A stretch of 64,000 bases of DNA from Diadema antillarum (taxonomy: Eukaryota). The stretch lies in contig NW_027270942.1 of assembly GCF_040938485.1 (NCBI RefSeq), positions 2,046,001-2,110,000 on the forward strand, read 5' to 3'. Shown here piece after piece: positions 317 through 60,002 of this stretch. Numbering within the stretch: the first letter of the stretch is position 1; each line of letters starts with the position of its first letter. The notes beneath the pieces are model-generated. The model saw nothing but the letters and a program-made list of their open reading frames with translations. It made no database searches and had not been told where the DNA came from. The translations under genes were made by a program, and so were the position numbers.

Positions 317-549
317 CTGAAGAAAAATGAAGTGGAAAGCAATTCGTCTTGAGACTTTATACGATTGTGTTGTAGATTGAAGAGAGTGACGCAAGCGATA
401 CAGAAAGAGATGTCCTTACTCTTTGTTGGTATTCATGCGTGCATGACTTACATTCATTTGTGTGTATGCCCACTTATAGTATTCATGAAGGAGTAAATGG
501 ATGAGATATGAAATATGAAAGTTTTGCGTCGGTGTGTAGTAATTAGATA

Positions 550-679
550 TCAAGTGTAAAAATAGTCGTATAAACACCGCAGGAGCCAAAAAATTGGACT
601 GACGTTTCGGTCAAAGACCTTTATCAAAGTGACTTTGATAAAGGTCTTTGACCGAAACGTCAGTCCAATTTTTTGGCTC
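550..679. mobile_element. Palindromic hammerhead-bearing element (paralog of 12745-12906), truncated by assembly gap
   Basis: Arms are reverse complements around the single base G631. + strand motif: GACT-TTGATAA-A-GGTC-TTT-GACC-GAAA-CG-TC-AGTC (631-665). Confidence 0.75.
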
Positions 680-934
680 NNNNNNNNNNNNNNNNNNNNN
701 NNNNNNNNNNNNNNNNNNNNNNNNNNNNNNNNNNNNNNNNNNNNNNNNNNNNNNNNNNNNNNNNNNNNNNNNNNNNNNNNNNNNNNNNNNNNNNNNNNNN
801 NNNNNNNNNNNNNNNNNNNNNNNNNNNNNNNNNNNNNNNNNNNNNNNNNNNNNNNNNNNNNNNNNNNNNNNNNNNNNNNNNNNNNNNNNNNNNNNNNNNN
901 NNNNNNNNNNNNNNNNNNNNNNNNNNNNNNNNNN
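680..934. other. Assembly gap (255 N)
   Basis: N run. It falls where the paralogous unit has fold-backs and (TA)n (about 12872-13540). Confidence 1.
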
Positions 935-7510: not shown

Positions 7511-12205
<4,695 letters not shown>

Positions 12206-12352: not shown

Positions 12353-12656
12353 CAGAAGAAAAATGAAGTGGAAAGCAATTCGTCTTGAGTCTTTATACGA
12401 TTGTATTGTAGATTGAAGAGAGTGACGCAAGCGATACAGAAAGAGATGCCCTCACTCTTTGTTGGTACTCATGCGTGTATGACTTACATTCATTTGTGTG
12501 TATGCCCACTTATAGTATTCATGAAAGAGTAAATGGATGAGATTTGAGCGAATGGAAGAATGACATTTATAATAATTACATATGTACATAATTATTGTCA
12601 CCCTACCCAAGGTGACAAAAGCGTTTGGTAAAAAAAAAGTATCAGCATCATACCGC

Positions 12657-12703
<47 letters not shown>
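12657..12703. repeat. (TA)n microsatellite
   Basis: TA run. Further TA runs at 12908-12960 and 13446-13501 bracket the fold-back elements. Confidence 0.95.
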
Positions 12704-12705
<2 letters not shown>

Positions 12706-12744
12706 AAATATGAAAGTTCTGCGTCGGTGTGTAGTAAGTAGATA

Positions 12745-12904
12745 TCAAGTGTAAAAACAGTCGTATAAACACCGCAGGAGCCAAAAATTGGACTGACGTT
12801 TCGGTCAAAGACCTTTATCAAAGTCACTTTGATAAAGGTCTTTGACCGAAACGTCAGTCCAATTTTTTGGCTCCTGCGGTGTTTATACGACTGTTTTTAC
12901 ACTT

Positions 12905-12906
<2 letters not shown>
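12745..12906. mobile_element. Near-perfect palindrome, putative Penelope-like element end pair carrying a hammerhead motif
   Basis: 80/81-nt arms around the single base C12825, with one A/T-run indel; the right end abuts (TA)n. Confidence 0.75.
12826..12858 (+). ncRNA. Minimal type I hammerhead ribozyme motif, U3-A8 core variant (mirror copy on - strand at about 12792-12824)
   Basis: ACT | TTGATAA (12829-35) A | GGTC-TTT-GACC stem II | GAAA (12848-51) CG TC^ | AGT. Stem I is ACU/AGU; ACGU is self-complementary. Confidence 0.65.
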
Positions 12907-12960
<54 letters not shown>

Positions 12961-12963
<3 letters not shown>

Positions 12964-13385
12964 GAAAGAAATTGGACTGAGGCGGGACGTTGCTCTCGAT
13001 CTTAGTCTCCCTTTTATTTGTCAAGCTTTCGGCCCGTCATTGGGCCTTCGTCAGGACCTACCAACAGAACGATTATTATATGAATAACCTGATGTGTCAT
13101 ATAATATATAATGCAATTTCACATATTACCAATCTTCTAAATCATTTCCTTTATATACACAAATCAATCATTCAATTCAATACAAATATCGTACAAGGAA
13201 ATGATTTAGAAGATTGGTAATATGTGAAATTGCATTATATATTATATGACACATCAGGTTATTCATATAATAATCGTTCTGTTGGTAGGTCCTGACGAAG
13301 GCCCAATGACGGGCCGAAAGCTTGACAAATAAAAGGGAGACTGAGATCGAGAGCAACGTCCCGCCTCAGTCCAATTTCTTTCAAT
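12961..13385. mobile_element. Long inverted repeat (191-bp arms, 43-nt spacer), putative Penelope-like element end pair
   Basis: 12961-13151 is the reverse complement of 13195-13385 except a small mismatch near the spacer. Left end abuts (TA)n; right end is followed by TATAT. Confidence 0.78.
13289..13326 (+). ncRNA. Minimal type I hammerhead ribozyme motif, canonical core (mirror copy on - strand 13020-13057)
   Basis: GTC | CTGACGA (13292-98) A | GGCCC-AATGAC-GGGCC | GAAA (13316-19) GC TT^ | GAC. Stem I is GUC/GAC; AGCU is self-complementary. Confidence 0.72.
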
Positions 13386-13452
13386 TATATGCAACCAACA
13401 ATGCGGCACCGCGTACGTTCGGGACCCAGGGAACTATCTCTCACATTATATA

Positions 13453-26790: not shown

Positions 26791-26837
<47 letters not shown>
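26791..26837. repeat. (TA)n microsatellite
   Basis: TA run directly abutting the 26836-27125 palindrome. Confidence 0.95.
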
Positions 26838-26840
<3 letters not shown>

Positions 26841-27125
26841 CAACAGTAGGTCAATATAAACTCCGTTGAAGACGTAAATTTGACGAATTTTCGCCCATAG
26901 GGCTTTGTCAAGTCAATACATTTGACACTTTATTTTGAAGCAGATCAAAATAAAAGATGCGTCGTCACTGTGATGGTAGCGCGTCCATCACAGTGACGAC
27001 GCATCTTTTATTTTGATCTGCTTCAAAATAAAGTGTCAAATGTATTGACTTGACAAAGCCCTATGGGCGAAAATTCGTCAAATTTACGTCTTCAACGGAG
27101 TTTATATTGACCTACTGTTGTGAAT
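26836..27125. mobile_element. Perfect palindrome (141-bp arms, 8-nt loop), putative Penelope-like element end pair
   Basis: 26836-26976 is the reverse complement of 26985-27125; loop TAGCGCGT; flanked by (TA)n and CTATA. Confidence 0.8.
27045..27081 (+). ncRNA. Minimal type I hammerhead ribozyme motif, U3-A8 core variant (mirror copy on - strand 26880-26916)
   Basis: TTGAC | TTGACAA (27050-56) A | GCCC-TAT-GGGC | GAAA (27069-72) AT TC^ | GTCAA. 5-bp stem I; AAUU is self-complementary. Confidence 0.7.
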
Positions 27126-27156
27126 CTATACTTTCTTATGACTCCGAGCAGAAACT

Positions 27157-27316
27157 NNNNNNNNNNNNNNNNNNNNNNNNNNNNNNNNNNNNNNNNNNNN
27201 NNNNNNNNNNNNNNNNNNNNNNNNNNNNNNNNNNNNNNNNNNNNNNNNNNNNNNNNNNNNNNNNNNNNNNNNNNNNNNNNNNNNNNNNNNNNNNNNNNNN
27301 NNNNNNNNNNNNNNNN
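27157..27316. other. Assembly gap (160 N)
   Basis: N run next to the palindrome and TA repeats. Confidence 1.
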
Positions 27317-31078: not shown

Positions 31079-47953
<16,875 letters not shown>

Positions 47954-59392: not shown

Positions 59393-59562
59393 TTAAGTGA
59401 AAGCCCACTGATTCACCCTCCATTATAAGTGACAAAAATAGGAAGATTGAGAGCTCCGTGACAACCCCCCTAAAAACAGCAACAACAACAACAACAACAA
59501 GCAAACAGACAAGCAAACAAACAAGCAAAAACAAGATCAGTCAAGTTGACCCCAAGTGCGTA

Positions 59563-59900
59563 TGTGACCCTGCATCACAAAACCAACAAAAAGTTGCCAG
59601 ACAAGGATTTTTACTGAAAAAACACACTCGAAGCTTTAAAATGATGTAAAGCTCAACTGAAATGGACTCTCCTATTGAAACCTATTGAAATATTGGAAAG
59701 AAAGCACACATTCTGGAAAAGTGTGACCCAAGAAAAGAGGCTCTGAAGTAGGGTTTATTCAAGCGCTTCTTCACCAAACCGTGCTAGCTGTGGGATGAAT
59801 GGGACAAAAAACAGGGTGTAAACCAGCGGAGTAACAACAATGAAGATATTATCAGATAAAGGTGAAATTGAGCATGTTTTACGAACACATTCTGTCCAAG
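59563..59900 (-). mobile_element. Partial copy of the E1/E2 TA-flanked transposon family
   Basis: TA|TGTGACCCTGCATCACAAAAC terminus, collinear with 40383-40730. Confidence 0.7.
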
Positions 59901-60002
59901 ATCATTGCCACGATGAACATGGAACAAATACCCAAGCTCTGACGCTTCGGAGCGTGGGTATTTGTTCCATGTTCCATGTTCATCGTGTCACTGCCGGCAA
60001 CC

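What the first reader, a model, noticed from the sequence alone, without database searches (positions are those of the whole stretch)
12745..12906. Palindrome whose symmetry centre is the 5' edge of a U3-A8 hammerhead
Seen: the core reads UUGAUAA instead of CUGAUGA. Established: positions 3 and 8 form a Watson-Crick pair in the active hammerhead fold, so U3-A8 is a compensatory double change rather than random decay. Seen: the axis (single base 12825) sits exactly at the start of stem I. Inference: the fold-back point was set by the ribozyme or pLTR boundary.
Basis: partly seen in the sequence, partly recalled or inferred. Interest (0 to 1): 0.75.

Follow-up and report, generated by a model that had tools for sequence, protein, structure and literature searches.

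The report
Head-to-head Penelope-type hammerhead stubs
The palindrome is real and consists of two short, mirror-image copies of a hammerhead-ribozyme-bearing retrotransposon tail inserted in a TA repeat, an arrangement and a ribozyme variant (U3-A8) that are both already described for Penelope-like elements, so it is largely ordinary.

Summary
Observation confirmed. Bases 12745-12906 are an 80/81-nt-arm palindrome around C12825 with one indel. Each arm carries a complete minimal hammerhead with a UUGAUAA core, starting 1 nt from the axis.

It is not a new kind of thing. U3-A8 minimal hammerheads, the extra base before stem II and the self-complementary stem III are published for Penelope-like elements (PMC4209133). 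Head-to-head copies in (TA)n with a one-sided 30-40-bp tail are published too (PMC8557442). All these features are present here and in two other palindromes of the window. One of those (26831-27130) is a homologue of this element, so its U3-A8 core is shared by descent.

The copy at 511-679 shares the axis, but it is a paralogue in a 13-kb tandem subtilase-gene duplication.

Contigs of public runs show a multi-copy family. Several copies share this axis within 2 nt and at least one single-arm copy starts at 12826, but seven inverted pairs join elsewhere. The hammerhead edge is therefore a preferred 5' end for this family, not a rule.

A transcript of the locus folds into an 80-bp hairpin, so the ribozyme is inert here.

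The scan has noted about 19 such palindromes in this genome.

The parts
12657..12703 (.). (TA)23 tract on the left of the insertion unit
   Evidence: Tandem Repeats Finder; sequence. It is absent at the same place in paralogous unit 1.
12704..12744 (-). One-sided 3' extension ('tail') of the minus-strand copy. It is not part of the palindrome but is part of the repeat family.
   Evidence: Many contigs of X1 and X2 cover it contiguously with the left arm, at depth similar to the arms (tables 2 and 8). It is homologous to the one-sided tail of the 26831-27130 palindrome.
12745..12824 (-). Left arm: the minus-strand copy of the element. Its hammerhead occupies 12825-12791 (core UUGAUAA 12821-12815, stem II 12813-12803, GAAA 12802-12799), with the cut predicted after C12795.
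12825..12825 (.). Symmetry centre, a single unpaired base. It is C here and G at the paralogue (631). Read as G on the minus strand, it is the fourth pair of stem I.
12826..12906 (+). Right arm: the plus-strand copy, without a tail. Its hammerhead occupies 12826-12859: ACU, UUGAUAA 12829-12835, extra A 12836, stem II 12837-12847, GAAA 12848-12851, ACGU 12851-12854, C17 12855, AGU(C) 12856-12859.
12908..12960 (.). (AT)26 tract between this palindrome and the next
511..679 (.). Paralogous copy of the same insertion unit: tail plus left arm 511-630, centre G631, right arm 632-679, cut by the N gap at 680-934. It was inherited with the ~13-kb tandem duplication.
12956..13445 (.). Neighbouring palindrome of a different family. 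Arms are 12956-13151 and 13195-13390 with a 43-nt spacer. Each arm carries a C3-G8 minimal hammerhead (CUGACGA at 13292 on + and 13054 on -). A one-sided tail at 13391-13445 is followed by (TA)28.
26831..27157 (.). Palindrome of a sister family. Arms are 26831-26976 and 26985-27130. Each arm carries a U3-A8 hammerhead (UUGACAA at 27050 on + and 26911 on -). The one-sided tail starts at 27131 and runs into an N gap; (TA)23 lies on the tail-less side.

Best explanation
The palindrome is an insertion scar of a short Penelope-like-element (PLE) type retroelement, or a non-autonomous derivative of one.

What it is. Two copies of the element's 3' portion lie head-to-head in a (TA)n tract, with their 3' ends pointing outward. 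The minus-strand copy keeps a 40-nt 3' tail. The plus-strand copy ends where that tail turns TA-like. Each copy carries the minimal, dimer-dependent type I hammerhead typical of PLE pseudo-LTRs, here in the known U3-A8 covariant form.

Inferred mechanism. Both nicked strands of the TA target primed reverse transcription by TA microhomology, one at the RNA's 3' end and one about 40 nt further in. The two cDNAs were then joined at their 5' ends. Alternatively, one cDNA switched strands and copied itself.

Why the axis is where it is. In this family the copies tend to stop at the first base of hammerhead stem I. This is most simply explained if the template RNA usually begins there. That makes the two arms equal and puts the axis at the ribozyme's 5' edge.

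At this locus the ribozyme is a passenger and is inert.
For: Shown:
- The full minimal-hammerhead architecture is present in each arm: 8 hits against 0 in 200 shuffles.
- The published hallmarks are all met: a base between positions 9 and 10.1, G10.1-C11.1, and self-complementary 15.1-16.1 (ACGU, AAUU, AGCU in the three families).
- Differences among the three families in stems I, II and III are all compensatory.
- All three palindromes abut (TA)n, each has a tail on one side only (40, 55 and at least 27 nt), and arm identity runs 3-6 nt into the TA tract on the tail-less side.
- PMC8557442 describes exactly this for PLEs: an inverted 5'-truncated copy, a 30-40-bp tail at one end, (TA)n bias and assembly trouble. 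N gaps abut two of the four palindromes here.
- The family is multi-copy in organism A. Other copies also end against (TA)n at 12742 and 12906. Other centre variants and at least one single-arm copy share the 12826 boundary.
- PMC4209133 reports U3-A8 cores and dual hammerheads on opposite strands 100-700 bp apart.
- A transcript across the locus folds as an 80-bp hairpin of -143.5 kcal/mol, z = -22, which buries the core.
Against: - No PLE reverse transcriptase or GIY-YIG ORF lies in the window; the longest ORF is 246 aa. The link to PLEs therefore rests on architecture and literature.
- Rfam hammerhead models do not match.
- Copies sharing the axis could all be paralogues of the subtilase array, or descendants of one truncated or palindromic master, rather than independent stops.
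- Centre-spanning depth is only about 10-15% of arm depth, and seven other junctions exist.
- No RNA evidence was found: the one RNA run laid nothing.
- The priming and joining steps are inferred, not shown.
Confidence: 0.75

Rival explanations
1. The 162-bp palindrome (or its 81-nt half) is itself an amplifying master. Under this view the shared axis in other copies is inherited, and says nothing about the ribozyme setting the fold-back point.
For: - The only second copy in the window is a paralogue.
- Contigs spanning the centre differ from the window by only 1-2 nt at the axis (table 4).
- Another scan note reports a 163-letter palindrome 'behind the protease genes' on another piece of the genome. 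This is an unchecked lead.
Against: - Arm depth is 6-9 times the centre depth, not the 2 times expected if all copies were this palindrome.
- Seven inverted pairs have other junctions.
- At least one single arm has unrelated sequence on both sides.
Confidence: 0.15
2. The palindrome is a fold-back or miniature DNA transposon (Stowaway or Tc1-mariner type) that inserted at TA. Its arms would be terminal inverted repeats, and the hammerhead likeness would be incidental.
For: A near-perfect palindrome flanked by TA repeats. Three different palindromes share one layout.
Against: - The 40-55-nt tails make the ends asymmetric.
- The ends merge into (TA)n by microhomology instead of showing a 2-bp duplication.
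- Hammerhead stems covary between families.
- Single arms and asymmetric pairs with filler bases exist.
- The motif does not occur by chance: 0 hits in 200 shuffles.
Confidence: 0.05
3. The fold-back is an assembly or library artefact, for example chimeric fold-back reads.
For: N gaps abut two of the four palindromes, and palindromes are known to trouble assemblers.
Against: - Two paralogous units each carry the palindrome with private differences: centre G versus C, a T/C difference, and an A-run length difference.
- Contigs from two different studies span the centre.
Confidence: 0.03
4. The locus is a hairpin-RNA gene (a miRNA or siRNA precursor) and has been kept for that reason.
For: It forms an 80-bp perfect hairpin of -143.5 kcal/mol. 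Sub-threshold matches to plant miRNA-precursor models were found.
Against: - All those matches are far below the gathering scores, for example 85 bits against a cut-off of 500, and are of the kind any long hairpin gives.
- No RNA was seen.
- The sequence belongs to a dispersed repeat.
Confidence: 0.02

Closest known systems
Minimal hammerhead ribozymes of Penelope-like elements (Cervera and De la Pena 2014, PMC4209133), including the U3-A8 core variant of Schistosoma mansoni Cercyon-type elements
   Same: - Type I topology with a short stem I (3-5 bp).
- An unpaired base between A9 and G10.1, and a G10.1-C11.1 pair.
- No stable stem III, only a self-complementary tetranucleotide suited to dimer formation.
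- U3-A8 in place of C3-G8.
- Mostly single or opposite-strand copies without an ORF.
   Different: - Stem II here is 4-5 bp, against 7-8 bp in the main S. mansoni families.
- The host appears to be a marine invertebrate. An earlier scan note calls it an echinoderm, which I did not verify.
- In this family the motif sits at the extreme 5' end of the copies.
Complex PLE insertions: an inverted 5'-truncated copy, a one-sided 30-40-bp tail and (TA)n target bias (Craig et al. 2021, PMC8557442; Evgen'ev and Arkhipova 2005 as cited there)
   Same: - Head-to-head inverted copies.
- A tail on one side only (40-55 nt).
- Insertion in (TA)n.
- Assembly gaps next to the structures.
   Different: - The arms are only 81 nt and no full-length copy is attached.
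- (TA)n bias was stressed for Naiads, which lack canonical hammerheads, whereas these elements carry hammerheads.
Metazoan non-LTR retrozymes (Cervera and De la Pena 2020, PMC7229834; Li et al. 2026 preprint, 10.64898/2026.07.22.740005)
   Same: Short non-coding elements with a type I hammerhead, probably mobilised by PLE machinery.
   Different: Retrozymes are direct tandem repeats of 170-400 nt with canonical hammerheads (loop-loop contacts) and give circular RNAs. Here the copies are inverted, minimal, and shorter than any reported retrozyme.
Twin priming, as in L1 inversions (Ostertag and Kazazian 2001; cited from my own knowledge)
   Same: Both strands of a nicked target prime reverse transcription. 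The second primes internally by microhomology, giving inverted segments.
   Different: L1 twin priming inverts non-overlapping parts of one RNA. Here both arms copy the same part, which needs two templates or a strand switch.

Membership tests
Hammerhead ribozyme (catalytic core) | Conserved core: U4 G5 A6, A9, G12 A13 A14, A15.1-U16.1, H17, and a Watson-Crick pair between positions 3 and 8 | tested here: met
   UUGAUAA ... GAAA-CGU-C. All invariant bases are present. Positions 3 and 8 are U-A, a Watson-Crick pair, instead of C-G.
Hammerhead ribozyme (catalytic core) | Self-cleavage activity | not testable with these tools
   No assay was possible. Published PLE minimal hammerheads cleave weakly, and only as dimers or with an engineered stem III.
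Hammerhead ribozyme (Rfam models RF00163, RF00008 and others) | Score at or above the gathering threshold of a curated covariance model | tested here: not met
   No hammerhead family was reported at gathering thresholds or at E<=10. This is expected for a motif without stem III and with a U3-A8 core.
PLE minimal hammerhead (min-HHR, PMC4209133) | [quoted passage not shown] | tested here: met
   An extra A lies at 12836 (12814 on the minus copy). The same is seen in the two other families of the window.
PLE minimal hammerhead (min-HHR, PMC4209133) | A conserved G10.1-C11.1 pair closing stem II | tested here: met
   GGUC/GACC, GCCC/GGGC and GGCCC/GGGCC.
PLE minimal hammerhead (min-HHR, PMC4209133) | Palindromic 15.2-16.2 region allowing a dimeric stem III | tested here: met
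   ACGU here, AAUU and AGCU in the sister families.
PLE minimal hammerhead (min-HHR, PMC4209133) | Consensus families with covariation in the stems | tested here: met
   Every difference in stems I, II and III among the three families keeps pairing. The families at 12745-12906 and 26831-27130 are homologous over about 115 nt.
Penelope-like element insertion | Reverse transcriptase plus GIY-YIG ORF, or sequence identity to the 3' end of such an element | tested here: not met
   No ORF longer than 246 aa lies in the window and no copy is attached to a coding body.
Penelope-like element insertion | An inverted 5'-truncated copy, a one-sided tail, and microsatellite (TA)n targets | tested here: met
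   compared.
Non-LTR retrozyme | Direct tandem repeats with canonical type I hammerheads that give circular RNA | tested here: not met
   The copies are inverted, not tandem. The hammerhead has no loop 1 or loop-loop contacts. No RNA was seen.

The most novel reading that the evidence does not exclude
This family may be an ultra-short (about 80-120 nt) retroelement whose template RNA begins exactly at the first base of hammerhead stem I. The start would be fixed by a processing or initiation event that abuts the ribozyme, much as the Penelope intron of Drosophila virilis ends at the 5' edge of stem I. The perfect palindromes would then arise when two such RNAs, held together as a hammerhead dimer, are each reverse-transcribed to their ends from the two nicks of a TA target. 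The central G/C could be an untemplated or cap-derived base.
Probability: 0.15. Interest if true: 0.6.

Novelty: new member of a known kind. Interest (0 to 1): 0.3.

Why it matters
The finding adds a marine-invertebrate family to the known U3-A8 minimal hammerheads, with in-genome covariation that supports the 3-8 pair.

It also gives a clean, very short example of the head-to-head, one-tailed, TA-targeted insertions of Penelope-type elements, whose integration mechanism is still unsolved.

If the preferred 5' end at the ribozyme edge holds genome-wide, it would offer a handle on how the template RNA of these elements is defined. As it stands, it is a correct observation of an already described kind of repeat.

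Tried and rejected
- Rfam search at gathering thresholds and at E<=10 gave no hammerhead hit, only generic hairpin matches.
- An exact search for the 24-nt hammerhead 3' half in metagenome contigs gave 0 hits.
- A sensitive blastn of the three elements against the window found no further copies or single arms.
- A MAFFT alignment of the three hammerheads misplaced the loops, so I read the covariation from the descriptor parse instead.
- The earlier-findings look-up by sequence was blank.
- I considered that the 81-nt arm is a slightly more-than-unit copy of a ~74-nt tandem or circular unit, because both 3' ends (CACUUGA-UAU and UUUUGA-UAU) resemble the 5' start (CACUUUGAUAA). I set this aside: the likeness is short, is explained by TA microhomology, and no tandem copy exists.
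- I considered arm-to-arm gene conversion. One difference in 81 nt against about 3.6 expected gives a Poisson P of about 0.13, which is not significant.
- The N runs were neither filled nor looked up.

Full report
**1. What is in the sequence**

Bases 12745-12824 and 12826-12906 are reverse complements of each other around the single base C12825. The only blemish is an A5-versus-T6 run. (TA)23 lies to the left at 12657-12703 and (AT)26 to the right at 12908-12960.

Read outward from the centre, each arm is (G/C)ACU-UUGAUAA-A-GGUC-UUU-GACC-GAAA-CGU-C|AGUC, followed by 47 more bases. This is a type I hammerhead with these features:
- all invariant core bases;
- U at position 3 and A at position 8;
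- one extra A before stem II;
- a 4-bp stem II closed by G10.1-C11.1;
- no real stem III, only the self-complementary ACGU;
- a 3-4-bp stem I.

A strict descriptor for this architecture finds eight sites in the 64-kb window. All eight lie in four palindromes, and none appears in 200 Markov shuffles. Rfam's curated hammerhead models do not report it, even at E<=10.

**2. Surroundings**

The window holds a tandem array of subtilase (Peptidase_S8) genes with a unit of about 13 kb. The palindrome lies about 540 bp after the stop codon of the second copy (12200-12202).

The same insertion unit is present behind the first copy at 511-679, with its axis at G631, and runs into an N gap at 680. Around it the two units differ by about 4.5%, and within the element by about 3%. 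This second copy was therefore inherited with the duplication. It is no independent test of where the fold-back lies.

No reverse-transcriptase ORF is present anywhere in the window.

**3. Two more palindromes of the same build**

- 12956-13390: 196-nt arms, a 43-nt spacer and a canonical CUGACGA (C3-G8) core.
- 26831-27130: 146-nt arms, an 8-nt centre and a UUGACAA (U3-A8) core.

All three share the extra base after A9, the G10.1-C11.1 pair, and a self-complementary tetranucleotide after GAA (ACGU, AGCU, AAUU). Every difference in stems I, II and III preserves pairing.

The element at 26831-27130 is homologous to the one studied here over about 115 nt. The homology covers the hammerhead, the 3' region and the extension beyond the palindrome (alignment score 69, against 14.8 +/- 5.2 and a maximum of 36 for shuffles). 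Its U3-A8 core is therefore shared by descent, not a second independent origin.

Each palindrome abuts (TA)n and has an extension on one side only:
- 40 nt at 12704-12744;
- 55 nt at 13391-13445;
- at least 27 nt from 27131.

On the tail-less side, arm identity continues 3-6 nt into the TA tract, because the tail of the partner copy begins TA-like (TAT, ATAT, TCTATA).

In these two other palindromes the hammerhead begins 65 and 97 nt from the inner arm ends. A hammerhead at the axis is therefore not a general property.

**4. Other copies in the species**

Contigs of two DNA runs from different studies (organism A, coded) hold the locus flank. I laid four runs on 12705-12908 at >=85% likeness.

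- **Copy number.** The family is multi-copy: 87 contigs in X1 and 198 in X2.
- **Tail.** The 40-nt tail is as deep as the arms, so it belongs to the repeat.
- **Core conservation.** No alternative letter reaches 10% of depth anywhere in the hammerhead, so UUGAUAA is the family state.
- **Outer ends.** Other copies end against (TA)n at 12742 and 12906.
- **Centre.** Depth in the centre bin falls to about 10-15% of the arms. Even so, several distinct contigs span the centre, including variants lacking 1 or 2 nt at 12825/12826.
- **Single arm.** A 1,444-nt contig of a third run matches exactly 12826-12906, with unrelated sequence on both sides.
- **Other junctions.** Seven inverted pairs of the same family join elsewhere and asymmetrically, with 4-18 filler bases (for example 12773>12851, 12779>12856, 12769>12860).
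- **RNA.** The one RNA run laid nothing.

The hammerhead's 5' edge is thus a recurrent, probably preferred, 5' end for this family, but not an obligatory fold-back point. Contigs cannot separate independent insertions from further paralogues or from descendants of a truncated master.

**5. What is known**

Cervera and De la Pena 2014 (PMC4209133) describe minimal hammerheads in the pseudo-LTRs of Penelope-like elements across metazoans. Their description includes:
- the unpaired base at the 5' end of stem II;
- the conserved G10.1-C11.1 pair;
- palindromic 15.2-16.2 positions;
- weak, dimer-dependent cleavage;
- mostly solitary copies;
- pairs on opposite strands 100-700 bp apart;
- explicitly, a U3-A8 covariant core with about 1,300 hits in Schistosoma mansoni.

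They also note that in Drosophila virilis the Penelope intron ends at the 5' edge of stem I.

Craig et al. 2021 (PMC8557442) describe the insertion structure: heavy 5' truncation, an inverted truncated copy adjacent to the element, a 30-40-bp tail often at one end only, (TA)n bias, and trouble for assemblers.

That positions 3 and 8 form a Watson-Crick pair in the active fold is established structural knowledge (Martick and Scott 2006, cited from my own knowledge).

Every defining feature I could test matches these descriptions. The exception is a link to a coding PLE, which the window does not contain.

**6. Mechanism (inferred)**

The outward-pointing 3' ends, the one-sided tail and the TA microhomology at both outer junctions fit target-primed reverse transcription from both nicks of a TA target. 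One priming would occur at the RNA's 3' end and the other about 40 nt further in.

The equal inner ends need one of two things:
- both cDNAs run to the same template 5' end and are then joined, with one extra base (C/G) at the junction; or
- a strand switch, in which the first cDNA is copied back.

A 1-nt centre is awkward for an intramolecular snap-back. Together with the single-arm copy that starts at 12826, this mildly favours the first option for this family.

The axis is about 30 nt upstream of the predicted cleavage site (after C12855), so ribozyme cleavage did not create it.

A transcript across the locus folds into an 80-bp hairpin (-143.5 kcal/mol, z = -22), which buries the core. The two motifs are also on opposite strands and cannot dimerise in cis. 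At this locus the ribozyme is therefore a fossil of the template RNA.

**7. Verdict**

- The compensatory reading of U3-A8 is supported, but it was published in 2014.
- The claim that the boundary sets the fold-back is only partly supported.
- The structure is a new family member of a known kind of repeat.

The scan has noted about 19 hammerhead palindromes in this genome. An earlier follow-up on another locus reached the same reading.

Noticed in passing
window 1-25800: A tandem array of at least three subtilase (Peptidase_S8) genes on the + strand, with a unit of about 12-13.6 kb and 91-99% identity between units. The third unit diverges right after its stop codon (~25800).
   Followed up: partly
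window 631 versus 12825: The single centre base is G in one paralogue and C in the other. This is what a flip of the palindrome centre by recombination between the arms would give, though a C/G transversion cannot be excluded.
   Followed up: no
window 12546-12703: Unit 2 carries about 160 extra bases that unit 1 lacks at the same place. They include a small hairpin (TTGTCACC...GGTGACAA), an A9 run and the left (TA)23. In unit 1, therefore, the tail of the element does not abut a TA tract.
   Followed up: no
window 12852-12868 and 13356-13380: The two neighbouring palindromes share TCAGTCCAATTT. In the first it spans the hammerhead cleavage site. In the second it lies about 40 nt after that element's own cleavage site and is preceded by AACGTC. 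It looks like a relic of the 3' half of a second, related hammerhead.
   Followed up: no
window 680-934 and 27158-27306: N gaps start inside the right arm of the paralogous palindrome and inside the tail of the 26831-27130 palindrome.
   Followed up: no
window 40379-41824, 32984-33184, 59557-59910: A large inverted repeat (arms of 377 and 192 nt, 93-96% complementary), with pieces repeated in inverted orientation about 8 kb and about 18 kb away. This is probably another transposon family, and no hammerhead motif was found in it.
   Followed up: no
window 12705-12908 in run X8: One contig of run X8 ended in an Illumina adapter sequence at 12762, so that run's contigs contain some library artefacts.
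   Followed up: no
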